Assembly: GCA_950097015.1 (NCBI GenBank)
Contig: CATNEN010000039.1
Span: 12,586,001 to 12,650,000 of the forward strand
Length of the DNA: 64,000 nt
Direction: 5' to 3'
Origin: Macrostomum hystrix
Taxonomy: Eukaryota; Animalia; Platyhelminthes
The notes beneath the pieces were generated by a model. That model was given only the letters and a program-made list of their open reading frames with translations, had not been told where the DNA came from and did no database searches. The position numbers were made by a program, and so were the translations under genes. Positions 3,901 to 44,470 of this stretch are shown piece after piece; positions within the stretch are counted from its first letter, which is position 1, and every line of letters starts with the position of its first letter.

Positions 3901-6900
3901 CGCCGGTTCATTTGCTATCCGCTGCAGCGACTGTTTGCCAGCTGCAGAACTGCTGCCAATGTCCAAGTAGAACCTTTGCCGGCGGAAGATGTGAATCCTC
4001 AAAAAGTTGAGTTTGCAGATCCCAGCTGGGAGGCCATTGTTCAAGCCAGGCGACTGACTAAAGCTTACTGTACCGGCGACCAGCAACAAGGTGCTATTGG
4101 AAATAGCTCATGCTGCTGCTGCCGACAGAATCGGACTAAAAATGCGTTGGATAATTTTTCAGGTTCGTTTTTTATCGCCGAGTTTAAATGATTGTTCGTA
4201 ATTTTAATCAACACGTTGAAGCCTTGTGGTTAGAGCATCCGACTCACGAAGGTCAGGGGTTCGATTTCCGACTCCACTGGAATAATTTGTGTCCTTTAGC
4301 AAGAGACTAATTAAATCTGCATTGCTTCAGTTCACCCAGCTGTTAAATGGGTACCAGCATTAGCTGGCATAATTGAAGGTGGGTGTGGCGTAACCTCAGT
4401 CCATGGACTGAACAGCTGTACGCAGCCTTCAGATGCGCCGGACAATAGCTGCGGCTGTGCTGTCGGCGGCACATCTGGCCCAATTGGGGCAGTTTTAATA
4501 TATTATTATTATTATTATTATTATTATTAGTATTAGTTCTAACTGTGTACACTAAATGCATCTAGTCAAGGATCAATAGCAGTAAAAGGGCGAATTTCGG
4601 CGATAAACTAGCCTCCTTAAACTTTTTTCTAAGAAACGTAGCTTTCCTTCCTTTAACTCCCAGTCCCCGTTGAGTCTAGTATTGCAAATGTTTAAGATTT
4701 TCCAGTGTTCCCTTCCAGCTAATATCTACGCCGACCAGATCACCGCTCTGATTGGTCCGAATGGTTCCGGCAAGTCGACGCTGATTCGTCTGCTGGCCGG
4801 CGACGAAATGCCAACCAGCGGGATGGCCTGCGTGCTGGGCAAGAGCGTCACCGACCCCATTCAGCGGCTGCGCGTGGCTGGACGCATCGGAATCTGCTAT
4901 CAGGTGAGATCACCTCAGGTCTATTTCATGCTCTACCTCAGCTCTAGTCTTATGGGGTTTTCGCCTAGTGGTTAAAGCGTTGGACTCACGACTTAAAACT
5001 TCGCTGGAACAATTTGTATCTTTTAGCGAGACGATTAACTCTGCATTGCTGTTAAATAGATACCAGCATTAGCCTGGGTAATTACTTCAGTGTACTTCAG
5101 TGATAGCTGATTCCCGCCAATCCTCAGGAGAATGTCCTGTGCGAGAGCCTAACAGTCTGGGAGTCCGTCAGAGCCGTCCTGGTCAGCCGCGGTCGCGATA
5201 CTCCCGATCAGCGGGCCGCATCTCGCAGCCTTCTGAACAGCCTGGGCCTGTCTGGCCGGCTATTGAACCGGCCGTCAACCGGACTCAGCGGCGGTCAGCA
5301 GCGGAAGGTGTGCGCGGCCCTGGCTCTTGCCGGCGACCCGGTCATGATCCTGCTAGACGAGCCGTCTAGCGGCCTGGATCCTCTGTCCCGACGGTCGTTG
5401 TGGTCGGCCCTGTCCCACCTCAAAGCTGGTCGGTGCGTGCTGCTCAGCACCCAGTTTATGGACGAAGCCGATCTATTGGCCGACAGAAAACTGCTGCTGG
5501 GTGATGGCAAACTGATCTGCGCCGGTTCTTCTCTGTTTATCAAAGGTATATATAAATGCGGCTGCGTTGCTCACGTTGAGACTGAGCAGCCCCAGGAGCT
5601 GGCTAAACTGATTGTCAGCGACTTGAAAGACAACATCGCCAGCTCTGCGGACTCGACCGATGCTAAAAAAGAAGAAGTGACGGCTGTTGTCACTGCGGCC
5701 AAGGAGGTTGAGGTTAGAGCGCCTAGGGAGAAACTGACTCAGGTGAGTTCGGCTGTTTGGATTTCACACTAATTAATCCCAATCCTACCACTATCATCCT
5801 CTCAATTCCACTATTTTTTATCTTTAATCCTATCACTCTCAACCTCAATCCCACTACTCAAATACCAAATCCCACTACTTTAATCCTTAATCCCACTACT
5901 CTAATCCTTAATCCCACTACTCTAATCCTCAAGCCCACTATTCTAATCCTCAATACCGCTACTATAATAATAAATACCGCTACTCTAATCCTCAATTCGC
6001 TACTCTAATCCTAAATACCGCTACTCTAATCCTAAATACCGCTACTCTAATCCTAAATACCGCTACTCTAATCCTCAATTCGCTACTATAATCCTAAATA
6101 CCGCTACTCTATTCCTAAATACCGCTACTCTAATCCTAAATACCGCTACTCTAATCCTAAATACCGCTACTATAATCCTAAATACCGCTACTATAATCCT
6201 AAATACCGCTACTCTAATCCTAAATACCGCTACTATAATCCTAAATACCGCTACTATAATCCTAAATACCGCTACTCTAATCCTCAATTCGCTACTATAA
6301 TCCTAAATACCGCTACTCTATTCCTAAATACCGCTACTCTAATCCTAAATACCGCTACTCTAATCCTAAATACCGCTACTATAATCCTAAATACCGCTAC
6401 TATAATCCTAAATACCGCTACTCTAATCCTAAATACCGCTACTATAATCCTAAATACCGCTACTCTAATCCTAAATACCGCTACTCTAATCCTAAATACC
6501 GCTACTCTATTCCTAAATACCGCTACTCTAATCCTAAATACCGCTACTCTAATCCTAAATACCGCTACTCTAATCCTCAATCCCGCTACTATAATCCTAA
6601 ATACCGCTACTCTAATCCTCAATTCGCTACTATAATCCTAAATACCGCTACTCTAATCCTAAATACCGCTACTATAATCCTAAATACCGCTACTCTAATC
6701 CTAAATACCGCTACTCTAATCCTCAATCCCGCTACTATAATCCTAAATACCGCTACTCTAATCCTCAATTCGCTACTATAATCCTAAATACCGCTACTCT
6801 ATTCCTAAATACCGCTACTCTAATCCTAAATACCGCTACTCTAATCCTAAATACCGCTACTATAATCCTAAATACCGCTACTATAATCCTAAATACCGCT

Positions 6901-9900
6901 ACTCTAATCCTAAATACCGCTACTATAATCCTAAATACCGCTACTCTAATCCTCAATTCGCTACTATAATCCTAAATACCGCTACTCTATTCCTAAATAC
7001 CGCTACTCTAATCCTAAATACCGCTACTCTAATCCTAAATACCGCTACTATAATCCTAAATACCGCTACTATAATCCTAAATACCGCTACTCTAATCCTA
7101 AATACCGCTACTATAATCCTAAATACCGCTACTCTAATCCTAAATACCGCTACTCTAATCCTCAATTCGCTACTCTAATCCTCAATACCGCTACTCTAAT
7201 CCTAAATACCGCTACTATAATCCTAAATACCGCTACTCTAATCCTAAATACCGCTACTCTAATCCTCAATTCGCTACTCTAATCCTCAATACCGCTACTC
7301 TATTCCTAAATACCGCTACTCTAATCCTAAATACCGCTACTATAATCCTAAATACCGCTACTCTATTCCTAAATACCGCTACTCTAATCCTCAATTCGCT
7401 ACTATAATCCTAAATACCGCTACTCTATTCCTAAATACCGCTACTCTAATCCTAAATACCGCTACTCTAATCCTAAATACCGCTACTATAATCCTAAATA
7501 CCGCTACTATAATCCTAAATGCCGCTACTCTAATCCTAAATACCGCTACTCTAATCCTCAATCCCGCTACTATAATCCTAAATACCGCTACTCTAATCCT
7601 CAATTCGCTACTATAATCCTAAATACCGCTACTCTATTCCTAAATACCGCTACTCTAATCCTAAATACCGCTACTCTAATCCTAAATACCGCTACTATAA
7701 TCCTAAATACCGCTACTCTAATCCTAAATACCGCTACTCTAATCCTCAATTCGCTACTCTAATCCTCAATACCGCTACTATAATCCTCAATACCGCTACT
7801 ATAATAATAAATACCGCTACTATAATCCTCAATACCGCTACTATAATCCTAAATACCGCTACTCTAATCCTCAATTCGCTACTATAATCCTAAATACCGC
7901 TACTCTAATCCTCAATTCGCTACTATAATCCTAAATACCGCTACTATAATCCTAAATACCGCTACTCTAATCCTCAATTCGCTACTATAATCCTAAATAC
8001 CGCTACTCTATTCCTAAATACCGCTACTCTAATCCTCAATTCGCTACTATAATAATAAATACCGCTACTCTAATCCTCAATTCGCTACTATAATCCTCAA
8101 TACCGCTACTCTATTCCTAAATACCGCTACTCTAATCCTAAATACCGCTACTCTATTCCTAAATACCGCTACTCTATTCCTAAATACCGCTACTCTATTC
8201 CTAAATACCGCTACTCTAATCCTAAATACCGCTACTCTAATCCTAAATACCGCTACTCTTATCCTCAATACCGCTACTCTAATCCTCAATTCGCTACTAT
8301 AATCCTAAATACCGCTACTCTAATCCTAAATACCGCTACTATAATCCTAAATACCGCTACTCTATTCCTAAATACCGCTACTCTAATCCTCAATACCGCT
8401 ACTATAATCCTAAATACCGCTACTATAATCCTAAATACCGCTACTCTAATCCTCAATACCGCTACTCTAATCCCAAATCTCCCTACTCTCGTTCCAGCTG
8501 GCCAAGTGGCTGGAGAAGGAGAAGTCTGCTGAACAAGGTCGCATCTCCAACTTCGGCCTCTCGCTGACGGGCTTAGACAGCGTGTTTCAACTCACCGGCG
8601 AGGCGGACGACGCCGCCAAGGCCGCCGACACTCTGGACGCTGCTGCCTTAGAGACAGTTGCCGGGTCTGGTTCTTCTAGCCGCGAATTGAAGCAATTCTC
8701 TGTGATGTTGCAGATGAACATTCGCAGACTGCGGCGCGATGGCTGCCGCATTGCCTGCCGGCTTTTCATGCCCAGCCTCCTGTTTGCCATCTTCCTGGCT
8801 GTGCTCATCGTCACCCGGGCGTCGATGGATTCTCCGCCTGGGCCTCTAGTCGGCTTGAATTCGCGCATGCCTCTTCAATTCCGTCCGAGCGAAATCTTTA
8901 CCAGCGTGTCCGGCGTCTGCCTGGCAGACGTCGGCGCCACTCCGCCGCAGGAAACCGACTGCGACAAACTGCTCACTGGCGGCATAAAAAGCTACGTTAA
9001 AGACATTAAGGTACTGCTCAAACCGGCCGACGTGTCGCTGACGACCTTTCTTAGCTGGCCAGATGTGAGTCTTGCTAAATGGCTGCTCTTTATCAACTTC
9101 CCTACTTTTCCCCCCTTCCGCCTTTCCCGTCATTATTTACGCCCCTCCCTTCATCCTTTCAGCCCCTCCCTTCATCCTTTCAGCCCCTCCCTTCATCCTT
9201 TCAGCCCCTCCCTTCATCCTTTCAGCCCCTCCATTCATCCTTTCAGCCCCTCCCTTCATCCTTTCCGCCCCTCCCTTCATCCTTTCGCCCCTCCCTTCAT
9301 TCTTTCCGCCCCTCCCTTCACACTTTCAGCCCCTCCCTTCATTATTTCCGCCCCTCCCCTCATCCTTTCGCCCCTCCCTTCATCCTTCAGCCCCTCCCTT
9401 CATCCTTCAGCCCCTCCCTTCATCATTTCAGCCCCTCCCTTCATTCCCTCCGCCCCCTTCATTCCTTCCGCCCCCTTTATTCCCTCCGCCCCCTTCATTC
9501 CTTCCGCCCCCTTCATTCCTTCCGCCCCCTTTATTCCTTCCGCTCCCTTTATTCCTTCCGCCCCCTTCATTCCTTCCGCCCCCTTTATTCCTTCCGCTCC
9601 CTTTATTCCTTCCGCTCCCTTTATTCCTTCCGCCCCCTTCATTCCTTCCGCCCCCTTCATTCCTTCCGCCCCCTTTATTCCTTCCGCTCCCTTTATTCCT
9701 TCCGCTCCCTTTATTCCTTCCGCTCCCTTTATTCCTTCCGCTCCCTTTATTCCTTCCGCCCCCTTCATTCCTTCCGCCCCCTTCATTCCTTCCGCCCCCT
9801 TTATTCCTTCCGCTCCCTTTATTCCTTCCGCTCCCTTTATTCCTTCCGCTCCCTTTATTCCTTCCGCTCCCTTTATTCCTTCCGCCCCCTTCATTCCTTC

Positions 9901-12900
9901 CGCCCCCTTTATTCCTTCCGCTCCCTTTATTCCTTCCGCTCCCTTTATTCCTTCCGCCCCCTTCATTCCTTCCGCCCCCTTCATTCCTTCCGCCCCCTTT
10001 ATTCCTTCCGCTCCCTTTATTCCTTCCGCCCCCTTCATTCCTTCCGCCCCCTTCATTCCTTCCGCCCCCTTCATTCTTTCCGCCTATCCCTCACTTCAAT
10101 CCGCCCTTTCCCTTTTCTTTCCGTCCCTCCTGCCCTACTTTCGGATAATTGCTGCCGCCTCTCCGCCCCTTCCCTCCTATCCGCCCCCTCCTTCACTTAT
10201 CCGCCCCTGTTTCTCCCCTCCGCCCCTTCTTCTTACCGGCCTGTCCTGTTTTCTGCCCCTTCGATAATATGCAAAATCCGGTTCTCCGCTGCCCGCCGGT
10301 CCCTCAGACTCAGGCTCAGTTCCAGAAGGCCTGCTCCTACGCGCTCCAGTGCCCGCTGGCTTACGCCAACGATTGGTCGCTTGCTGGCGGGCTGGGTGGC
10401 AATGCCAATCGCACCGTCTACTTCGGTTTCTACTTTGACGAAAAGGAGTACACAGCCATGAGCAACGTTGTCCAACTCATTAAGGGCTACAGCACTCTGG
10501 CTAAACACTTCGGATTGCAACTGCGTCAGATCCCAGACATCGATATTGATAATTTTGTTGGTAAGTTAAACAAAAATATGCTTTCTTTATTATTTTAACT
10601 ACTTATCACCTGAGATGGCTCATATGCCAGGGATAATCCCCTGACACCCCAGATTCTAATCTGGATCATCCCCAGTGATAATCCCCTGACACCCCAGATT
10701 CTAATCTGGATCATCCCCGGGGATAATCCCCTGACACCCCAGATTCTAATCTGGATCATCCCCAGTGATAATCCCTTGACACCCCAGATTCTAATCTGGA
10801 TCATCCCCAGGGATAATCCCCTGACACCCCAGATTCTAATCTGGATCATCCCCAGTGATAATCCCCTGCCACCCTAGATTCTAATCTGGATCATCCCCAG
10901 TGATAATCCCCTGACACTCCAGATTCTAATCTGGATCATCCCCAATGATAATCCCCTGACACCCCAGATTCTAATCTTTATCCCCAGGGATAATCCTCTG
11001 ACACCCCAGATTCTAATCTGGATCATCCCCAGTGATAATCCCCTGCCACCCTAGATTCTAATCTAGATAATCCCCTGACACACCAGATTATAATCTGGAT
11101 AATCCCCTGACACCCTAGATTCTAATCTAGATAATCCCCTGACACACCAGATTCTAATCTAGATAATCCCGACACACCAGATTCTAATCTAGATAATCCC
11201 CTGACACCCTAAATTCTAAACTGGATCATCCCCAGTGATAATCCCCTGCCACCCTAGATTCTAATCTGGATAATCCCCAGTGATAATCCCCTGACACCCT
11301 AGATTCTAATCTGGATAATCCCCAGTGATAATCCCCTGACACCCCAGATTCTAATCTGGATAATCCCCAGTGCTAATCTATCGCAATGGATTATCCCCAA
11401 TCTTCCATCCTGCCTCCGCCAGAGCCTGCTGACAACCTTGTTCCGTTAAAGAACGCATCAGCTTACTCAATGGGCGCCATCATTCGCAATCCGCTGGAAT
11501 CGTCATTTTACCTTGACCTGCCCATGTGGGCCCTGCTGCTGCTTATCTCAGTCATCCCTGTCAGCCTGCTGGGAGATGCAATCGAGGATCGATCTACTGG
11601 GCTACGATCGCAGCTGCGGTCAATGGGTGTCTCGGCATTGGGCTACTGGTGCAGCACATGCCTGGTGCACTGGCTGCAGTACCTCCTGCTCTGCCTGCCC
11701 GCCTGCGTTGCTATGGTAATTGTCCTGCCGCAGACCTACACCAATGCCTATTATATAATAGGTGTATTCCTTGTGCTGCTACTGATAGGCCTGCCAGTTA
11801 ACCAGCTCATTGTATACGTGGCATCCACCTGGTTGCGCCAATCAAATGCTGTTGCTACTGGCATACTGTTTGTTGTCTGTATAGCATGCGGCCTAGCGCC
11901 ACTGCTGGTGCAATTGAATAACTTCCTTGGCCTGGCCCTAATTGTCCTGTGGCCGCCCTACGCTGTCATCGGCCTGCCGTTCTATGCTAGCAAAGCCGCT
12001 GCTAATGCGGCCGAGTTCTATGGCCAAGCTGGTCCGAGCGGCGTCTATAATCTGTTCCAGATCTATGCTAGCAACCCTCTGCTTCTGCTCAGCCTGGCCA
12101 GTGTGCTTTTTCACTTCTGCCTTCTCACCGGCCTGCTGGCTGCTCGGGAGCGAGGCCTGCGCGCTCTATTGTCAGCCGCCGTTAGCCAATGCTGCAATTC
12201 TAAGGAGCGAATTCGTGCGGCATGCTTCAGGGGCCTGCTTCGACGATGGGGGCCGATCAGCAATGCGCGCGATCAGCCCGACTCCATTTTGATGACGAGG
12301 CGTGAGTCCTAGCAATGCCTGAATCCCTAGGATAAACATGCCAGCCTCCCATATCCTTAGGATCAGTCTATCAATCTCCCGGATCCTCAGAATCAATCTA
12401 TCAATATTATATCATATCCTCAGTATCAATCTAATAAACTTCCGGATCCTCAGGATCAATCTATCAATATATCATATTCTAAGTAACAATTTATTAATCT
12501 TCCGGATCCTCAGTATCAAACTGTCAACCTCACAGATCCTCAGTATCAATCTGTCAACCTCACAGATCCTCAGTATCAATCTGTCAACCTCACAGATCCT
12601 CAGTATCAATCTGTCACCCGGCCGAAAATAAATGTCCTTTAAAAGCGTCAAATGGCACATAAAAAATGAATTAGAGCGAAGCGCAAAATAACTGTCGAAA
12701 CGTCCGGAAAATGGGCTTTTTCGACAATTGGTGGCACAGCGTGGCACAAATTTTACTGTGCCAAGCTGTGCCATATGGCCTAAGTGAGACAATTAGAAAT
12801 CGATCATTTTAATTGTGCACTACTATGCCACAACTGTGTCAGTCGTCCTAGTTCGTTTTGAATACATATAATTGCGCACAACTGTGCCAGAAATGTGCCA

Positions 12901-15900
12901 TTTGGCGTAGATACACCTGACGAGTAAATGTGCTGTTTGAAGCAGTCAAACTGTGCCATTTGGTGTAGATACACCGGACGAGTAAATGTGCCGTTTGAAG
13001 CAGTCAAACTAGGGGCGCAAATGTGCCATTGATGCTGCTATAGGTGACGCGTTAAAGTGCATGAAGTAGCCAGCATGTTGTGAAAAAGTACATGCTTAAA
13101 GGAGGGAACACAAATTGTAAAAGGTTGCCAATATAAATTAAACATTGAAACAATCGCGCGAAGGCGTACTTGAAATTAAAACGATCTGCCGGATGCTGCC
13201 CATACATATATATTTTCTGGAAAATAGAAAACAAGAATAGCGACGAAAAAATACGCAAGTATCAAAGCTATTATGACAGTAACTGGTATGGTTAGCAGCT
13301 AGTAGCGCAATAAATAGTGTGGAAAGCAGATTATAAAATAAGAAAGAAAGCCAATTTAAACGAAAGAGGAAACAAAACCAATGGCAAAACCGAAAAAGCA
13401 AAAAGTTGAGGCTGCGAAGCAAGCAAAAGTAAGAGCAAAACAGGTAAGTAACAAACAATGAAAAAGTGAAAAAAACAGAAGCAGAACGTAGAACAAAACC
13501 CCTATACCGTTGTATTGCATGGCGTCATTGACGTCAGCCGACAGGTGATACCAGTGTGGCCTGACTCCTGGTGCTAGTCTAATTTACGATCCGGGAACTA
13601 ACCATAATAGTGTAGTTGGTTGATTATGTGGGAAGGAGCAGATTTTCAGGGGAAAACCCTATAGAGGCATGGGGAAACAGGCCACGATCGGTCCCATATA
13701 GGCCAAACAAAGTTTTTTATGCTGGAAGCAACGTACAGATCTGTCATTCCTCGTGAATGGCATTGGTCGCCTCCGACTGCACAGTGTCAGTGACACCGGT
13801 AGCCGCACCTTGTCGACGCTTCTTGACAGGCAAACGTCCGGACCGCTTTTCACGTCGACTGACGGTGATGCAGCAACGGACGTAGGCCCTTTCGACAGCC
13901 TTCATATTGGTAGCGATGTCGATTCCAGCCAGATAGTCGACAATGGCATTTAAGCGCCGCGTGTCCACTGGCAGGCGCGGCCGACCAGGCTCGGTAGCGC
14001 GACCACGCAACGACGTAACCAGCAGCTCGTCGTCGCTGAAACAACCGCGCACCATCTCGCGGACAAGCGCACTGAGGTTGGCCGGAGTCGCTGAAGCCTT
14101 GTAGACATTCACTCGCGCCGTGACCCTGGTCCGGGCGAGGTTCGACGTAAAGCCGACACCGACTGGCTGCAGAGGTGTGTTATATATAAGGATTGGAGAG
14201 CACATGAGTAACAATAAGATAGGGGCGCGATCATAAATGACGGACTATTCAGGGCTTACCGTTGCATCAAGCGTTTCGGTGTCGTCGGCCAGCATGTCGT
14301 CAAGTGTGACGGCTGGGTCGACAAGCTGGTTGAGGTGGACGTCGAGGTGCTGCGTTAGCTGCTGCTTCAGTTGTTCTAATATTGCGGCAATCAAACGCGG
14401 TTGCGCCATTTTAGCGCGGCGGAACAGGTCAGTTCGCAAGTTGTCAATGACAACCTGACTGTCATCCGCCGAAATCGAAGCATCGGACGTCGCAGCCTCA
14501 GTACAAGTTGCACCGGATGTATGCGCAGCGCACGGTTCCGTCACCGAAGCATGTGGTCCAGTCGCTTGCGTTAAAGCGAGAATGAGCTCCTCGTTCTGTT
14601 GTGTCAATTGACGCAGTTGATCACGGGCGCGTTCAAGCCGCAACTCAAGCTCCTCTCGCTCGTGTTCACTCTTTCGAAGTTCTTCCTCGATAGTTTTGTT
14701 GGCACCATCTCGCTTAGCCAGTGCGACAACATAAGACGCACACTGCGGACACGGTTTAGGCGTTGGTACCTTGGGTAAATGAGCACATGTGCGCTCATGT
14801 CGCTTGGCCTCGGCATACGACTGATATGGACCCTTCCGAATGTGAGCCTCATATCGCGACCCGCGCAGTTTGTCGTCCGCCGTGACAACAAGAACGCGAG
14901 CACCTAGACTCGACTCCGCTGCCAATGGCGCCGGAGCCGGATCGACAATGCAGTCGTGGTCGACAGCCTGGTGGTTGCCCTTGGACACGAACTGGACAAC
15001 CCAGAAGGTCTTTTTTGCCTTAGTGGTCTTGTCGGGTGCCATGTAAAATGCGCGTTGAATAGCTGAAATTGTTAATGTTCAGAGTCAGTAGTTGCATAAG
15101 TTGTCATCTATTCGTGATGAAACATGATCATTACTATAACTGAGTGGTAAAGCTCAGTAAAGTGACTAAAGTGACGAAAGGGTGATAGAAAACTGGTAAA
15201 GCTGTGGTACTGTGACGAAACATAAGCGATGCACTCGCTTTCGGTTTATTTACGTACAGTTAAATGGAAGACATACAACGATGTCGACACGAAGGTCGTA
15301 AATAGGTAATAGGTAATAGGTAACGAGAGACTGCATTCACGCATAGTTACTAGGGCGGCACTGGCAAGCAAACTCGTTTCGTTGCTAGTTATGGCCAAAG
15401 ACATTTGTCTTATATTTTTTATACATGAAGCGCCTACGCTTCCAACCTCGCTATAAATTAAGCACGAAGACTAGAGGCAACGCCTTGAACCCACACGCTC
15501 CGGACCGCCCATTTGCTTTGATAAATAAACACGCACGCTAACTTCACTGCAACTGCCTCCTTCAGCACAACAGTTATGAATATGAAAGTTGGGCACTCGG
15601 CAGTAGGCTGATGTGCGTGTCACTGACGACGCACGGTCCAGCAATAGAGGAGAAGCCAACAGAAGTCAACTCGCCATCAAACACATCGAATGGACGGACG
15701 GATAGACGACGAACATGTGCAGCGCGACAGCACTCGTCAGTGCCGGAGTACGCGACGAAAGGTGACTCATCGGGCTCGATGACTGGCACGATCCGACACT
15801 CAAAGGCCACACCCAGCGCTTCCGACGCGCTAATGGACTCGATTCTAGCGAACACGAATTTCTCCGGATCGTCGCATTTGAGTCCGACGAAACACGAAGA

Positions 15901-18900
15901 TGTTGACGTGCCGAGTCGCTGCTCGTCAAGTGTCCCGCACGGCTGAAGTATCATGCCACACGGCAGGATCACTCTTTTGTATTGTCCGGCACCTGCGTGA
16001 TAGAAGGGAATCACACGTAGACAGCCGACCGTCAAATGACGGTCATTGTTGGCCAATTTTGAGAGGGTTGGCATGCGCAGTTGATGTCGCATCTCTCTAC
16101 GACCAATGTCGAACTCGATCTGCATCACCAGCTCCTTGTCGGCCAGAGAGTTGCCGTGGACACGTGCGCGGGTTTTGCGATGTTCAGATTCGAACAATCC
16201 AGCAGACAACGAGGCAGTAGGACCCAATCGCAACACCGCAGCCGTCATATGACGACACACTGAGTGGGCGTTGTACGTCAGTGCTCGATTGGAATAGAGG
16301 ACTCCGAGGTCGCGATAGAAATGGTCCAACGTGACCTGAATCCGCGCCATGTAATTCCTGCTAGTGTTCTGGTAACTGAGCCAGAAAAGAGCGGAGGACA
16401 ACAACAAAAAATGGTTGTAGTAGTCCCTGTGCAGCGGACCATCAGCCAGAACCATGGGGCCAAATGCAAACAACCAGCAAGCAAACTCGTGGCCGCGCAT
16501 GAACTTCAGTTCCCGTAGTGAACGGGGGTGTCGCCGTTGCACACTGCTTGGCATTGTAACACGCCGCAACCTGCCGTCAATGACGTCAATTGCATTGTGC
16601 AGATTTGGCCTGGTCAAGCTTGGGTCCGGCTTCTCGTGTCTAATAAGAAACCACTGCGATAGTAACCAGCGTGCCAGTCCACTTAGTGCTTGGTGGAGGA
16701 AACATGGCGGGCAGTCGGCAATATAGTCGAACCCGATGACTCGACTGAATTCAGAGACGCCTTTAACACCGAACAGATGAAGGTCTCGCGGCGCCTTGAT
16801 ATTCGCCAGTGAAACCGTGTCCTCCAGATTTCGCAGTTCGACTTGACCCACATGACGGTCCAGCAATGCACGCACTGTTGTTTGGTCAATGGCGACTGGG
16901 TAATATCTAGCGTTGCCTCGAACATTTGCCTGGCGCTTTGTTGCAATGTAACACTTGTCACACCCGAATGTGCCATTGTACATTAACAGCTCCAGCGCTG
17001 CCTGACGCTGTGGTGCGTCCATGATGACACAGTGCACATGAAACCGCATGACAGAGTGCCGCCCCTCATTGACGTACGACACCCCATCAGTCCGAATTTT
17101 GTTCAATTGCAGCCGCAGTAGAGGAATGTAGGCAGCCGTCGGCATCTTCGTCTTGCTACCCCATAGGCCACACACAACGAGGAAGCGGGACTTGTGTGTA
17201 TCGGACACTTCGTTGACGCTCAGGTAGATGGGACACATCTCATAGCGGGATGTCTTGTACATGGCGAACCCATCTATGTTCAGCGTGTAAGTTAGGTCCG
17301 CCCTGTCGTTCAGCCGGGTACCGCATGCGCGCTTGAATTCGGCGTACTTCTCGCTGTTAGTAAAGTGAATGGTGTCGGGTTCGGCAGTCATGTCCACCGG
17401 GAAGGTGACGTGCCGAAGGAACGAGCGACATTCGAGTGCGGACTGCAGTTGTCGACCGATGTCAAACTGCCAGTACCGGTTCAAGTTGATGTCAGCGACC
17501 GCTATCCGACACTCTCGACAACCGTCTCGGGTCGCTTCAGCAGCTTCTGTGGCGGCCTTGCAGCTGCGACACACAACGTAACATTCTGTGTTGCATCCGG
17601 TAGTGTCAATGACATTATTCAGGTAATACACAGAGCGTGGGAAGTGGCTCCCGACGGGCAACAGCTCGTCCAGTAGACGCAATAAACGGTCTGTTCCTTT
17701 GCGCGTCAATGACTCGGTCTCGGCAAACTCTGTTAGCAATAGCGCCGTCTCGATGTATGTTCGACGCGCACCTGGATAGATTGGCATGTCATTGATATGC
17801 TGTGGCATCGGTCGCTCAGGTGTCGGTGGATCAGCAATGTGACATTGGTCTCGATGCTTTCGATGTTGCCTCTGAATAATTTTGCGCACCGCATCTGGTA
17901 CGACTTCTGTGTGGTTGACCTTTCGCACTTCATCTCGTAGCCTACGCGTAGGCGCCATGTGTTGACTGGAATGGGAACAACGAATACATTGTCATTTCCC
18001 GGAGTCCGTCCGTGTGAGATTGTTGAAATTGTTGTTTCTATTGTATAAACGTATATATAAACGTATATAAACATTCTCGTGACTCGTGGGTACAGAGGGT
18101 AGACAGGCAGAACTGCTCTGTCTGTGCCTACGGTCTAACTAACTCCGATCGCAACCGATCTTCGACATACAACGAAAACTCGAGCCTTTCATATAAACGC
18201 CCCTATTACAACAGTACCGCCGGATACAACAGCAATACAAGAGATATTCTGTCAACATGTAACAGTGTAGGTTTGCACTCGTTCTGTCTGATATTCGTTC
18301 AGAAAATGCACATGAACATATAACAGTCAACATGTAACATTGTAGGTTTGCATCTAGTAACACATGAGTCTACATCAGCGAGTAGTATTGCAACTCGATT
18401 GCTAGCACCGCTAGCACAATGCAGCGGTATGCGAGGCCCGCACGGAAACCGGTGTCAATGACGCCGGATATGCGGTTGCGGACACCGCCACCGCGCTTCT
18501 GCATTGACTTGTCTGCACGAGCGGCAGCCACAGAACTGCTTGCTTCCGCGAGCGCCTCCGCCAGCTCGGTTGGCAGGTTTGGAGGCTGCTCGTGCATAGC
18601 CAGGCGCCGCAGCTGTCCGCATGCCACCAGGTGATTGGCAGTCGAACGCACTGCGAAATCAAAGCAAGTAAAAGCGCAGTCAGCTTCGCGTTGCTGTTTT
18701 ATGATCCGTATGAGCTGACTGTAACGCTCCCGCCACACGACGTTGTCTATCACGCTTACGGCGGGCGGCATTACAAGGCACTGATATGGCTCCTGTCGCC
18801 GGATGTGGACACACATAGCGGCGTGGTATGGATTTTGGACGTCAACCGGCGACGGACCATTGGCAGTTGCTGGCACTTCGTGCATGGGAGAGTCACTGAC

Positions 18901-21900
18901 TCTCCCATGAGACACTTCTACATCAGCCGCAATAGCGCTTTCTCGACCTGCGTCGACGATTTCGGTCCCAGGGCCGCCAGTGGCGACGATGGACGTTGCT
19001 GGCACTCCATGCACGGGCACGGCAGGTAGACGGCTTGTGAGGTGTCGCATCGCTGGATCGTGGTTTGCATTATAATGCTCGTCACATAGCACCACGTACC
19101 TAGTGACGGTGCACGTGTGGCACAAAATAGTTGCCATTGTGTGGCATTTGCAGCACTGCATTGTTTTGTTGCACTGCAATAAATTGGATTAGTGTGGAGA
19201 TATTCAATACGAATCATGTACTCCCTAAATAAAATATTCGTTCTGTCTGATTGTCTGATCAGGCAACGGTGATGTAACCTTATTTAATCCCCAGCTTGGC
19301 CCAGCCAGTTGCCTATCTCCACAGTGTATTTTCATTTAACTGGCCTAAACCAGTCATTTAACGGCCTAGGCCGATTAGACGTAACGTCTTCCTTTTCTTT
19401 CTTTTTCTTAATGATTTCTTAATGATTTGTCTATGGCAGTACCATATGGGGGCTTCGCCCCCACACCCCCAGTGGGGGCTCTGCCCCCACACCCCCGACA
19501 TTTCGTCTATAGCCAACTATTCAGCAAAAGAGCAAAAATAACAAGCCAAGGCCGAGATAGCTCGTACTGGCAAACAAACAGTCAATTATATATTTCGTAC
19601 CAAAAATATAAGCTTTGTTTGCTATGCCTGGTGGGCACAAAGAGGACAGACAAAGACATTTACAACTGTGCAAAAGGGCATAGCTGTGGCACAACGGGCA
19701 CATTTGTTACAAGTGCGCCAAGTACGTGCCAATTGGTTTTCGTGGTCAATTAGCAATAACAATGTTAAATGTGCCAAGTGTGCCAAGAGGGACAGACATA
19801 GACATTTACAACTGTGCAAAAGGGCATAGCTGTGGCACAACTGGCACATTTGTTACAAGTGTGCCAAGTGTGCCAATTGGTTTCAATGGGCAATTATCGT
19901 ACAAAAGGTTATTTGTGCCACTTGTGCCAAACAGGACAGACATAGACATTTACAACTGTGCAAAAGGGCATAGCTGTGGCACAACTGGCACATTTGTTAC
20001 AAGTGTGCCAAGTGTGCCAATTGGTTTCAATGGGCAATTATCGTACTAAAGGTTATTTGTGCCACTTGTGCCAAACAGGACAGACAAAGACAGTTATAAC
20101 TGTGCCAAAGGGCATATTTGTGGCACAACTGGCACACTTACTGTTTTTGAGAGGACATTTATTTTCGGTCGGGCAATCACCCACATACTGCACTAATCTT
20201 AATGCTGCCCAACTATCTTTCAGGCGAAGCGGATCAATTAGAAATTGTAGGCGCCCAATCTGACGTGTTTGATGAGGGTGTGCGCGAGGAAACTAAACGG
20301 CTGATCAGTCAGAAATCAACTGCATCCAGTGACACCTCTGGGAAGGGCGGATCTGAGGATCCTGTTCAGGTAAATATTCATGCTGCCTTTGTTTATTTCC
20401 GCTAGTATGAGCGTCATCTACGATCCGTGACTCTCACCTGTGACCCACAGGTAATCAACCTGGTCAAACGCTACGCCGGCGGTTACAGTCCGGCCGTTAA
20501 TGGCGTCACCTTCGGCGCCCAGGCGGGCCAGATCTTCGGCCTACTGGGCCCGAACGGCGCAGGCAAATCCACCACCCTGTCAGTGCTGGTTGGAGAGCGC
20601 TCAGCTAGCGGCGGCCGCTGCCTGGTGAACGGACTGTCCGGCAGAGAAGCTGCCCGCCTCGGTCGCATTGGCTACTGTCCGCAGTACTCGCCTCTGCTCC
20701 CAAGCATCACCGTGCTGGAGCATCTGGAATTCTATGCCGCGGTGCGCGGCGTCCCTCAAAGCCTAATCAAGAGCCAAGCTGATTCATTGGCCGTCTCCAT
20801 GGGCCTTGGCAACTTCCGACACCTGCGCGCGGGCTACCTGTCCGGAGGTAATCGGCGTCGCCTATGTCTGGCCATCGCCCTGCTAGGCGATCCGACAGTC
20901 TTGGTCATCGACGAGGCTTCAACCGGAGTCGATCCGCAGAACAAGCGGGCCATCTGGCGCGCCGTCCGTGCTATGGCCCGTCAGGACCGGGCAGTTGTCC
21001 TCACCACGCACAGCATGGAGGAGGCTGAGGCTCTATGCTCGCGAGTTGGCATTCTGCATTCCGGCAAACTGCTGGCTTTGGGCACCACTCAGCAGCTGCG
21101 ATCAAGGTGAGAATTTTAACCTGCAAGTTTTGGGCTGGCTGCACTGTACCCTGTTGACGGGAGTGTACGTTGCTAGGGGAGTGTAGGTTGCTAGTAGTGT
21201 AGGTTGCTAGGGGAGGGTAGGTTGCTAGGGTAGTATAGGTTGCTAGCGGAGTGTTGCTAGAGAAGTATAGGTTGCTAGCGGAGTGTTGCTAGAGAAGTAT
21301 AGGTTGCTAGCGGAGTGTAGGTTGCTAGAGAAGTATAGGTTGCTAGCGGAGTGTAGGTTGCTAGGATGTGTAGGTTGCTATGAAAATGTGAGTTGCTAGT
21401 TAAGTGTAGGTCGCTGGTGGAAAATAAGGGTGTGTAGGCTGCTAGGGTAATTTTCCTTGCTTGAAAAGTAGAGATGGCGAAGGGAAATATTAGTTGCTAG
21501 GGGAGTGTACCTTGCTAGGGCAATATATATAGGTTGCTAGGCGTTTTTGGAAATGTACCTTGCTATTTGATTTGCAAGCGCTACTCTTCCGTGCTCCACA
21601 ATGATCCCATGCTCTGGTTTGCTGCATTTAATCAACACTTGCCACCAGGTACGGCAAGAACTACACCCTGGATGTGCAGCTGAAGCGTAATGACCAACTT
21701 GACGCCTCCTCCGAGCTGTCCAACCTGCTGAACACTGTGTTTATTGAGCATAAGAAACTGGAGGACTTTCTCGCCTGGTCTCGCTTCGAGGTGGCCCTGC
21801 AGACAACTCGGCAGGACGCCCTCAGCCACGCTCTGATGGCGCTTGAAAACTGCAACCTGGTTGAGTCTTTCGCTTTGTACCAAGCCTCGCTAGACCAGAT

Positions 21901-44137: not shown

Positions 44138-44470
44138 TGCCATTCCCTGCATCTGTGCCATTCCTCACCCTGCATCTGTGCCATTCCTCACCCTGCATCT
44201 GTGCCATTCCTCACCCTGCATCTGTGCCATTCCTCACCCTGCATCTGTGCCATTCCTCACCCTGCATCTGTGCCATTCCTCACCCTGCATCTGTGCCATT
44301 CCTCACCCTGCATCTGTGCCATTCCTCACCCTGCATCTGTGCCATTCCTCACCCTGCATCTGTGCCATTCCTCACCCTGCATCTGTGCCATTCCTCACTC
44401 TACATGTGTGCCATTCCTCACCCTGCATCTGTGCCATTCCTCACCCTGCATCTGTGCCATTCCTCACCCG
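44138..44470. repeat. 23-bp minisatellite (CTGCATCTGTGCCATTCCTCACC)
   Basis: About 14 copies. Confidence 0.95.

What the first reader, a model, noticed from the sequence alone, without database searches (positions are those of the whole stretch)
12617..20173. Intact three-gene CACTA/EnSpm transposon: B-box protein, DDE transposase and coiled-coil/BEN protein
Seen: 22-bp CCC-TIRs with one mismatch, a CA TSD and three uninterrupted co-oriented genes. Known: plant CACTA elements pair the transposase (TnpD) with a TnpA DNA-binding protein; BEN domains are sequence-specific DNA-binding/chromatin modules; B-boxes are zinc-binding interaction modules typical of TRIM proteins. Inference: this lineage uses a BEN protein in the TnpA role and carries a third, B-box accessory gene that may be regulatory or anti-silencing. 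I do not know of a described element with this exact gene set. Intact ORFs and TIRs suggest it is young and possibly active.
Basis: partly seen in the sequence, partly recalled or inferred. Interest (0 to 1): 0.85.

Follow-up and report, generated by a model that had tools for sequence, protein, structure and literature searches.

The report
Flatworm CACTA-type transposon with BEN partner
This is an intact 7.6-kb cut-and-paste jumping gene of the CACTA/Mirage/Chapaev group in a flatworm genome. Besides its transposase it carries a second protein with a BEN DNA-binding domain, a pairing I could not find described, while the claimed third "B-box" gene is real as an open frame but poorly supported as a B-box.

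Summary
The element (12617-20173) has 22-bp CCC...GGG terminal inverted repeats with one mismatch. It has a CA target-site duplication; 2-bp duplications flank all five complete copies in the genome. Its ends carry dense TGTGCCA subterminal arrays, and it has three co-oriented intact genes on the minus strand.

- **Gene 2 (794 aa):** a CMC-superfamily DDE transposase. It has no direct Pfam hit, but transitive homology reaches Transposase_21, and the D229/D314/CxxC/Hx4H/E590 signature is invariant.
- **Gene 3 (two exons, 93-nt intron):** a conserved N-terminal domain, a CxxC, a coiled coil and a BEN domain. The BEN call rests on a profile hit to NAC1 BEN structures and an AlphaFold model whose top 11 fold matches are all BEN-DNA structures. 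In at least 10 divergent sister families of this genome a co-oriented BEN-like reading frame lies 1.5-5 kb downstream of the transposase, so it is a core accessory gene.
- **Gene 1 (263 aa):** a family-specific orphan. Its Cys/His finger is only weakly B-box-like. True B-boxes occur in two sister families, fused to the BEN protein.

The same scan has already noted the transposase-BEN pairing elsewhere in this genome. Verdict: a new variant of a known kind. Activity is plausible but unproven.

The parts
12615..12616 (.). Left target-site duplication (CA)
   Evidence: A 2-bp TSD is seen in 5/5 complete copies.
12617..12638 (+). Left terminal inverted repeat (3' end relative to the genes), CCCGGCCGAAAATAAATGTCCT
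12653..13028 (.). 3' subterminal region with 9 TGTGCCA/TGGCACA motifs, including a 58-bp x 2 repeat (12894-13010)
13744..14166 (-). Gene 3 exon 2 (140 aa plus stop). The BEN domain is roughly 13837-14085.
   Evidence: Pfam BEN sub-threshold, E 0.068. Family profile hits NAC1 BEN 7bv9/8yzs at E 7.6e-4 and 1.2e-3. AF2 pLDDT 79.5. Foldseek top 11 are BEN-DNA structures.
14167..14259 (-). Gene 3 intron, 93 nt, GT..AG, phase 0
   Evidence: Sequence read. The paralogue L049 encodes the same parts in one continuous 470-aa frame.
14260..15042 (-). Gene 3 exon 1 (261 aa): conserved N-terminal domain (~14788-15009), CxxC (14740-14751), coiled coil (~14563-14718)
   Evidence: (coiled-coil-type weak Pfam hits). 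The N-terminal domain has no PDB sequence match.
15574..17958 (-). Gene 2, CMC-type DDE transposase, 794 aa. D229 = 17272-17274, D314 = 17017-17019, C333xxC336, H565x4H570, E590 = 16189-16191. N-terminal CxxC..CxxC finger (C130-C150).
18370..19161 (-). Gene 1, 263-aa orphan protein. The N-terminal Cys/His finger (19042-19155) is weakly B-box-like. The C-terminal ~120 aa resemble the end of an ORF at C5:2762718.
19638..20136 (.). 5' subterminal array: 144-bp unit x 3.5. Across the wider span 19201-20173 there are 18 TGTGCCA/TGGCACA motifs; three CCAATTGG palindromes lie at 19729-20024.
20152..20173 (-). Right terminal inverted repeat (5' end relative to the genes)
20174..20175 (.). Right target-site duplication (CA)

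Best explanation
An autonomous, structurally intact cut-and-paste DNA transposon of the CMC (CACTA/EnSpm-Mirage-Chapaev) superfamily. It belongs to a flatworm clade whose elements carry two core genes. One is a DDE transposase that cuts at the CCC..GGG termini and makes 2-bp target duplications. The other lies downstream and encodes an N-terminal domain, a CxxC, a coiled coil and a BEN domain. I infer that the BEN protein dimerises through its coiled coil and binds the family-specific short repeats packed into both subterminal regions (here TGTGCCA, about 28 copies). This would mark and pair the ends for the transposase, the job TnpA does in plant En/Spm, although the two proteins are unrelated. 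Gene 1 is a lineage-specific extra gene with a zinc finger of B-box-like spacing. It is most likely a recent acquisition, or a split-off of the B-box that sister families carry at the N-terminus of the BEN protein. Its role is unknown. Shown: anatomy, TSDs, copies, CMC homology and motifs, BEN fold, conserved placement of a BEN-like frame after the transposase. Inferred: DNA target of BEN, end-pairing role, present-day activity.
For: - **Ends and copies:** TIRs and 2-bp TSDs in 5/5 copies. There are three long copies. Two 1.35-1.47-kb deletion derivatives keep exactly the two subterminal regions and have their own TSDs, so they were mobilised in trans.
- **Transposase:** 4517 representative homologues. 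Relatives P0011, P0013 and P0020 pass the Pfam Transposase_21 gathering score. D229, D314, C333/C336, H565/H570 and E590 are invariant, matching the C(2)C and H(3-4)H signature between the second D and last E described for CMC (PMC12730594). 2-bp TSDs are known for animal CACTA elements (PMC6004678).
- **BEN:**
- **Synteny:** 10 of 13 non-family BEN-like hits lie 1.5-5 kb downstream of, and co-oriented with, a transposase hit of 35-40% identity; in six of these a match to gene 3's exon 1 lies between the two. The same order appears in Macrostomum lignano protein models (P0007 cluster).
- **Subterminal motifs differ between families:** TCATCCGG, TCGTCCGG or TGTGCCA.
- **Selection:** synonymous changes between copies exceed the neutral expectation (transposase 14 syn: 16 nonsyn, where about 7 syn would be neutral).
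Against: - The transposase has no direct Pfam hit.
- The termini are CCC, not the usual CA(C).
- BEN is below the Pfam cut-off in every member (best 18.4 bits against 23.2), and Foldseek E-values are only 0.02-0.9, although the ranking is unanimous.
- No binding data link BEN to TGTGCCA.
- No evidence of spliced or trans-spliced transcripts. Metatranscriptome contigs at 90-100% identity cover the transposase and BEN gene, but also the intron and intergenic DNA, and leave gene 1 essentially uncovered (only two short stubs at its 3' end), so they may be DNA.
- The family is low-copy. The other two long copies are broken: C2 has stops in the transposase and in gene 3, and C37 has gene 1 disrupted.
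Confidence: 0.72

Rival explanations
1. The BEN protein is a regulator rather than a transposition cofactor. It would be a transposon-encoded repressor or insulator-like factor that binds the subterminal arrays to dampen, time or shield expression (self-limitation or anti-silencing), while the transposase recognises the ends by itself through its N-terminal zinc finger.
For: All solved BEN proteins matched (Insv, Bsg25A/Elba, BEND6, BANP, NACC1) are transcriptional or chromatin regulators. The transposase has its own invariant CxxC..CxxC finger. The 5' array overlaps the presumed promoter region.
Against: The arrays lie at both ends, including the 3' end far from any promoter. The non-autonomous derivatives keep both arrays. 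Plant TnpA does both jobs, so the two roles are not exclusive.
Confidence: 0.2
2. Gene 1 is not a functional part of the transposon. It would be a captured or chimeric host-gene fragment (transduplication, as in Pack-type elements), still open by youth, and its 'B-box' is just a generic cross-brace Cys/His finger.
For: There is no homologue among 5.8 billion clusters and none in the Atlas. No paralogue occurs in any sister family. The C-terminal 120 aa match the end of an unrelated long ORF at C5:2762718 (E 1e-7). The Pfam B-box hit is only E 0.057, and hhalign against true B-boxes of sister elements gives probability 0.4%. The C37 copy has lost gene 1 while keeping an open transposase.
Against: The 263-codon frame is open in two copies that differ by 14 substitutions, 7 of them synonymous where about 3.4 would be neutral. 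It has the same YAG acceptor just before the ATG as the two core genes. Its only Pfam and PDB leads are both the ANCHR/ZFYVE19 B-box. Sister families do carry bona fide B-boxes in their accessory protein.
Confidence: 0.4
3. The element is a dead relic: structurally intact by chance, no longer mobile.
For: There are only three long copies, 1-3% diverged. Two are broken. The left TIR of this copy carries a private substitution. No expression is shown.
Against: All catalytic and zinc-binding residues are conserved. All three frames are open. Near-identical sequence variants occur in independent environmental RNA libraries.
Confidence: 0.35

Closest known systems
Plant En/Spm (CACTA) two-protein system, TnpD transposase plus TnpA
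   Same: Same superfamily of transposase (Transposase_21 relatives, C(2)C and H(3-4)H motifs). Short TIRs plus long subterminal arrays of a short motif at both ends. A second, co-oriented gene downstream of the transposase. Short TSDs. Deletion derivatives that keep the ends.
   Different: The accessory protein is not homologous to TnpA: it is a coiled-coil/BEN protein. Termini are CCC..GGG rather than CACTA. The TSD is 2 bp rather than 3. The genes look like separate units, each preceded by a splice acceptor, rather than products shown to arise from one alternatively spliced transcript.
Animal CMC elements (Mirage, Chapaev, animal CACTA such as ENS1_Cis)
   Same: 2-bp TSD as reported for animal CACTA (PMC6004678). 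The transposase clusters with a large animal family whose members hit Transposase_21 and DUF1258.
   Different: The reported animal elements have invariant 5'-CAC..GTG-3' termini. I found no description of a BEN, or B-box-coiled-coil-BEN, second gene in the searchable literature. Repbase and Dfam could not be consulted.
BEN-domain chromatin and transcription factors (Insv, Elba/Bsg25A, BEND3/6, BANP, NACC1)
   Same: Same fold by model comparison and profile search. Several pair BEN with a coiled coil or other dimerisation module and bind short palindromic or repeated DNA motifs.
   Different: These are host genes. Here the domain is carried by a mobile element, is very divergent (below the Pfam cut-off), and no canonical BEN above the cut-off was found anywhere in this genome.
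PIF/Harbinger two-gene transposons (transposase plus Myb/SANT DNA-binding protein)
   Same: Same logic: the DNA-binding and end-recognition function is delegated to a separate accessory protein that is needed alongside a DDE transposase.
   Different: Unrelated transposase superfamily, a different DNA-binding fold, and 3-bp TWA TSDs.
TRIM/tripartite-motif B-box-coiled-coil module
   Same: Sister families (L056, L060) and the M. lignano P0007 model have B-box then coiled coil in that order, upstream of a C-terminal specificity domain.
   Different: No RING. The C-terminal domain is BEN. In the window's own family the putative B-box sits in a separate gene and is not verified.

Membership tests
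CMC (CACTA/EnSpm-Mirage-Chapaev) DNA transposons | Transposase homologous to Pfam Transposase_21 (tnp2/TnpD) | tested here: met
   There is no direct hit, but the query matches P0011 at E 5e-42, and P0011, P0013 and P0020 pass the PF02992 gathering score. Hits carry PF02992.
CMC (CACTA/EnSpm-Mirage-Chapaev) DNA transposons | [quoted passage not shown] | tested here: met
   D229, D314, C333-x2-C336, H565-x4-H570 and E590 are invariant in A1 and A5. The criterion is from PMC12730594.
CMC (CACTA/EnSpm-Mirage-Chapaev) DNA transposons | Termini 5'-CA(C)..(G)TG-3' | tested here: not met
   All eleven ends read CCCGRCCG.... The literature says 'in most cases', so this is a deviation, not an exclusion.
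CMC (CACTA/EnSpm-Mirage-Chapaev) DNA transposons | TSD of 2-3 bp (the wider clade spans 2-5) | tested here: met
   2 bp in 5/5 copies.
CMC (CACTA/EnSpm-Mirage-Chapaev) DNA transposons | Subterminal arrays of short repeats | tested here: met
BEN domain (PF10523) | Pfam gathering score | tested here: not met
   13.8 bits against 23.2. The best family member reaches 18.4.
BEN domain (PF10523) | Profile-level sequence similarity to solved BEN domains | tested here: met
   The family profile A2 has as its top two of 177,635 PDB sequences the NAC1 BEN domain, at E 7.6e-4 and 1.2e-3, over about 78 positions. Bsg25A is also listed.
BEN domain (PF10523) | All-alpha BEN fold | tested here: met
   Model pLDDT 79.5 with five helices. 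Foldseek ranks 1-11 are all BEN domains, nearly all solved in complex with DNA, with probability 0.72-1.0 and target TM 0.43-0.59.
BEN domain (PF10523) | Sequence-specific DNA binding | not testable with these tools
   Needs EMSA, PBM or DAP-seq.
B-box zinc finger (PF00643 / PF22586), gene 1 | Pfam gathering score | tested here: not met
   ANCHR-like_BBOX scores 14 bits against 27, E 0.057, and is the only hit. zf-B_box is not reported.
B-box zinc finger (PF00643 / PF22586), gene 1 | Eight Cys/His ligands in B-box spacing | tested here: inconclusive
   The pattern C3-x2-C6-x7-C14-x2-C17-x8-C26-x2-H29-x4-H34-x5-H40 is read. From memory, this fits a B-box1-type pattern except for x8 where x4 is usual. 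The ZFYVE19 B-box 2d8v aligns at E 1.2.
B-box zinc finger (PF00643 / PF22586), gene 1 | Homology to verified B-boxes of sister elements, or a B-box fold | tested here: not met
   hhalign probability is 0.4%. BLASTP is not significant. The single-sequence AF2 model is unusable at pLDDT 34.
B-box zinc finger, accessory protein of sister families (L060, L056) | Pfam gathering score | tested here: met
   zf-B_box 24.9 bits against 24.1. ANCHR-like 28.0-28.3 bits against 27 in the genome scan.

The most novel reading that the evidence does not exclude
BEN domains are, or began as, the end-binding accessory proteins of a CMC transposon lineage. If so, a B-box-coiled-coil-BEN protein is the animal counterpart of TnpA. 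Host BEN chromatin factors, and the BEN genes of large DNA viruses, would then descend from domesticated or transferred copies of such transposon genes, as happened for THAP, BED and the Harbinger Myb domain.
Probability: 0.15. Interest if true: 0.8.

Novelty: new variant of a known kind. Interest (0 to 1): 0.55.

Why it matters
Two-component DNA transposons, where a second protein reads the ends, are known for plant CACTA (TnpA) and PIF/Harbinger (Myb-like). An animal CMC clade that uses a coiled-coil/BEN protein would add a third, independent solution. It would also give the BEN domain, so far known from chromatin regulators and DNA viruses, a mobile-element context that could explain its patchy spread.

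It also offers a testable pair of protein and repeated DNA motif, in a flatworm genus used as a laboratory model. An intact copy with natural 1.4-kb non-autonomous partners is a ready substrate for a transposition assay. The repeat content of this assembly was explicitly left uncharacterised by its authors (PMC10468722).

Tried and rejected
- **Direct Pfam scans:** nothing for the transposase or gene 1, and only sub-threshold BEN.
- **PDB sequence search with the transposase:** nothing.
- **Gene 1:** no homologues in the search for homologous proteins. The ESM Atlas was blank for gene 1 and for gene 3 exon 1. Single-sequence AlphaFold gave pLDDT 34, unusable. MAFFT and hhalign against true B-boxes were not significant.
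- **N-terminal domain of gene 3:** a profile against PDB gave no match, so the domain stays unassigned.
- **RNA evidence:** only short metatranscriptome contigs, which also cover the intron and spacers. No verdict on transcription, splicing or trans-splicing.
- **Other negatives:** Rfam and tRNA scans of the element were empty. The CCC termini were not found at the ends of sister-family loci within the 1.5 kb held.
- **E491 as catalytic residue:** I first took E491 for the catalytic E and rejected it in favour of E590, which follows the H(4)H motif.
- **Joined model left out:** Each was searched by reference on its own, and the joined 401-aa model was not submitted to any tool.


Full report
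**Observation**

The stretch 12617-20173 is bounded by inverted repeats CCCGGCCGAAAATAAATGTCCT and CCCGACCGAAAATAAATGTCCT (22 bp, one mismatch, 28 bp at 89%). It is flanked by CA on both sides.

A whole-genome search found the same termini eleven times. They form five complete elements plus one solo end:
- the window copy;
- a 7.5-kb copy on C2 (97% identical);
- an 11.5-kb interrupted copy on C37;
- two deletion derivatives of 1.35 and 1.47 kb that retain only positions 1-687 and 6664-7557;
- a fragment on C5.

All five complete elements are flanked by a different 2-bp direct repeat (CA, CC, TG, GA, AT). The 2-bp target-site duplication is therefore real, and the short derivatives were moved in trans.

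Both subterminal regions are packed with TGTGCCA/TGGCACA. The window holds 53 against 10.6 expected, and 28 of them are in these two regions. This includes a 144-bp unit repeated 3.5 times at 19638-20136 and a 58-bp unit repeated twice at 12894-13010.

**Genes**

Three open genes lie on the minus strand. Each ATG is preceded within 7-21 nt by a pyrimidine-rich ...YAG acceptor (ttattgcag, cattccag, aatttcag). This agrees with the scan's separate note s1-845284.

Gene 3 is split. Exon 1 (15042-14260, 261 aa) ends in phase 0 before GTAAGC. A 93-nt intron ends in CTGCAG, and exon 2 (14166-13747, 140 aa) continues the frame. A paralogue (L049) encodes the same succession of parts in one continuous 470-aa frame, which supports the splice. 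Each was searched separately by reference.

**Transposase**

The 794-aa protein has no Pfam hit, but it has 4517 representative homologues. A close clade of 32-41% identity covers its full length. Its named members are from Macrostomum lignano.

A very large family at about 25% identity includes members that pass the gathering score of Transposase_21 and also hit DUF1258 (the hits likewise carry PF02992). In alignments A1 and A5 the following are invariant:
- an N-terminal CxxC..CxxC finger (C130-C150);
- D229 (NIDGF);
- D314 (MDAP);
- C333-x2-C336;
- H565-x4-H570;
- E590.

[quoted passage not shown] A 2-bp TSD is documented for animal CACTA elements (PMC6004678). The one deviation is the terminus, CCC..GGG instead of CA(C)..(G)TG.

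**BEN protein**

Exon 2 gives only a sub-threshold Pfam BEN hit (E 0.068). The same weak hit recurs at the same place in the M. lignano model P0007 (E 0.04) and in paralogues L056 and L060 (E 0.003-0.004).

A profile of exon 2 and eight relatives (A2) finds the NAC1 BEN domain as its two best matches in the whole PDB (E 7.6e-4 and 1.2e-3, about 78 positions). An AlphaFold model built on that alignment (pLDDT 79.5, five helices) has as its eleven best Foldseek matches only BEN domains: Bsg25A, Insv, BEND6, NACC1 and BANP, nearly all solved in complex with DNA, with probability 0.72-1.0. I take BEN as established.

Exon 1 carries three further parts:
- a conserved N-terminal domain (FWVVQF ... 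RY.A.I.KGP) shared by all sister families, with no match in PDB sequences;
- a CxxC;
- a coiled coil.

**The BEN gene as a core part of this clade**

The genome holds dozens of transposase loci at 35-40% identity. Of 13 BEN-like hits outside this family, 10 lie 1.5-5 kb downstream of such a transposase on the same strand. In six of these ten a match to gene 3's exon 1 (N-terminal domain to coiled coil) lies between the two. With roughly 40 loci in 220 Mb, chance co-location is negligible.

M. lignano gene models fuse transposase, B-box, coiled coil and BEN in that order. The regions downstream of the BEN gene carry different enriched motifs in different families: TCATCCGG, TCGTCCGG, and TGTGCCA here. 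That is what one would expect if each BEN protein reads its own element's ends, although this is not proof. A genome-wide Pfam BEN scan found nothing above the cut-off, and its only hit was one of these transposon genes.

**Gene 1 and the B-box claim**

The N-terminus reads C-x2-C-x7-C-x2-C-x8-C-x2-H-x4-H-x5-H, eight possible zinc ligands. Its only Pfam lead is the ANCHR-like B-box (14 bits against a cut-off of 27). Its second-best PDB lead is the ZFYVE19 B-box (E 1.2), behind an unrelated plant protein at E 0.51. Neither is significant.

Further tests gave no support:
- there are no homologues in 5.8 billion clusters or in the Atlas;
- no paralogue is associated with any sister family;
- comparison with genuine B-boxes failed;
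- the fold attempt was useless.

Two sister families (L056, L060) do have a B-box that passes the Pfam cut-offs, but it sits at the N-terminus of the BEN protein.

The C-terminal 120 aa of gene 1 resemble the end of an unrelated long ORF on C5 (E 1e-7). Gene 1 therefore looks like a lineage-specific chimera. It may be a relocated B-box joined to captured sequence, or simply a captured fragment.

The frame is open in two copies that differ by 7 synonymous and 7 non-synonymous changes, where about 3.4 synonymous would be neutral. That is a hint of constraint, no more.

**State of the family**

Copies differ by 1-3%.
- The C2 copy has two stops in the transposase and one in gene 3.
- The C37 copy keeps an open transposase but has gene 1 disrupted.
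- The window copy is the only one with all three genes open and all catalytic residues in place.

Four wastewater metatranscriptome runs from one study contain short contigs, 90-100% identical, over the transposase and BEN gene. They also cover the intron and the spacers, leave gene 1 essentially uncovered (only two short stubs at its 3' end), and show no splice joint. They prove presence, not transcription.

**Host**

The assembly size and contig number (220,453,370 bp, 42 contigs) are exactly those reported for Macrostomum hystrix. The authors of that assembly state that the nature of the repeats was left for later work (PMC10468722). A M. lignano protein (P0167) shares 43% identity with exon 2 overall, and most residues are identical over its last ~50 residues, so the family or a close relative also exists there.

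**Comparison and novelty**

The element works like plant En/Spm: a CMC transposase, short TIRs, subterminal arrays and a second protein. The second protein, however, has a different fold (BEN), the termini differ, and the TSD is 2 bp.

Full-text searches found no paper that links BEN to CACTA, EnSpm, Chapaev or Mirage, or to transposon-encoded proteins of this type. Repbase and Dfam could not be consulted.

The scan itself has already noted the same pairing on other DNA of this genome. Note s1-262287 was followed up with the same conclusion, and s1-337221 describes a similar three-gene element. I rate it a new variant of a known kind, of moderate interest.

The three-gene set with a separate B-box gene is specific to this small family and is the least secure part of the finding.

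Noticed in passing
window 12416-12616: The element is inserted in a 30-bp minisatellite (6.7 copies) that ends exactly at the left TSD.
   Followed up: no
window 19281-19389: About 110 bp between the 5' subterminal array and gene 1 are ~82% identical to part of a ~255-bp dispersed repeat with at least 35 genomic copies (90-98% alike among themselves). It may be a MITE/SINE-like fragment inside the element, or a shared promoter piece.
   Followed up: partly
window 19447-19496: A G-rich 26-bp palindromic unit (TGGGGGCTCCGCCCCCACACCCCCAG) x 1.9. Copies ~96% identical occur at many other loci.
   Followed up: no
window 19729-20024: CCAATTGG occurs once per 144-bp subterminal unit (3 copies). From memory, this palindrome is the core site of the Drosophila Insv BEN domain. 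It may be coincidence, since the three copies are one repeat.
   Followed up: partly
G000, e.g. C1:3462914, C1:14151699, C7:10980706: About 20 near-identical copies of a 447-aa ORF, about 12 of a 157-aa ORF and 6 of a 176-aa ORF all carry ANCHR-like B-box matches. These are other repeated, probably mobile, B-box-bearing genes in this genome.
   Followed up: no
L066 (G000:C5:2761218-2764703): A long ORF (>667 aa) with tandem ~13-aa repeats (KDSQVSLEDAAVK). Its last 120 aa resemble the C-terminus of gene 1. It is unclear whether it is the donor or the recipient.
   Followed up: partly
window 44154-44459: A 23-bp minisatellite (CTGCATCTGTGCCATTCCTCACC x 14) accounts for 14 of the window's TGTGCCA hits. 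It shows no other similarity to the element.
   Followed up: yes
window 15043-15080, 17959-17975, 19162-19185: Each of the three genes has a strong 3' splice acceptor 7-21 nt before its ATG. This is compatible with SL trans-splicing of a polycistron, or with alternative splicing from a common leader as in En/Spm. The RNA data at hand could not decide.
   Followed up: partly
runs X1-X4: Wastewater metatranscriptomes hold 90-100% identical pieces of this element, including a variant with the 33-nt in-frame insertion near codon 48 that the C2 and C37 copies carry. This suggests the host or a close relative lives in that habitat.
   Followed up: no
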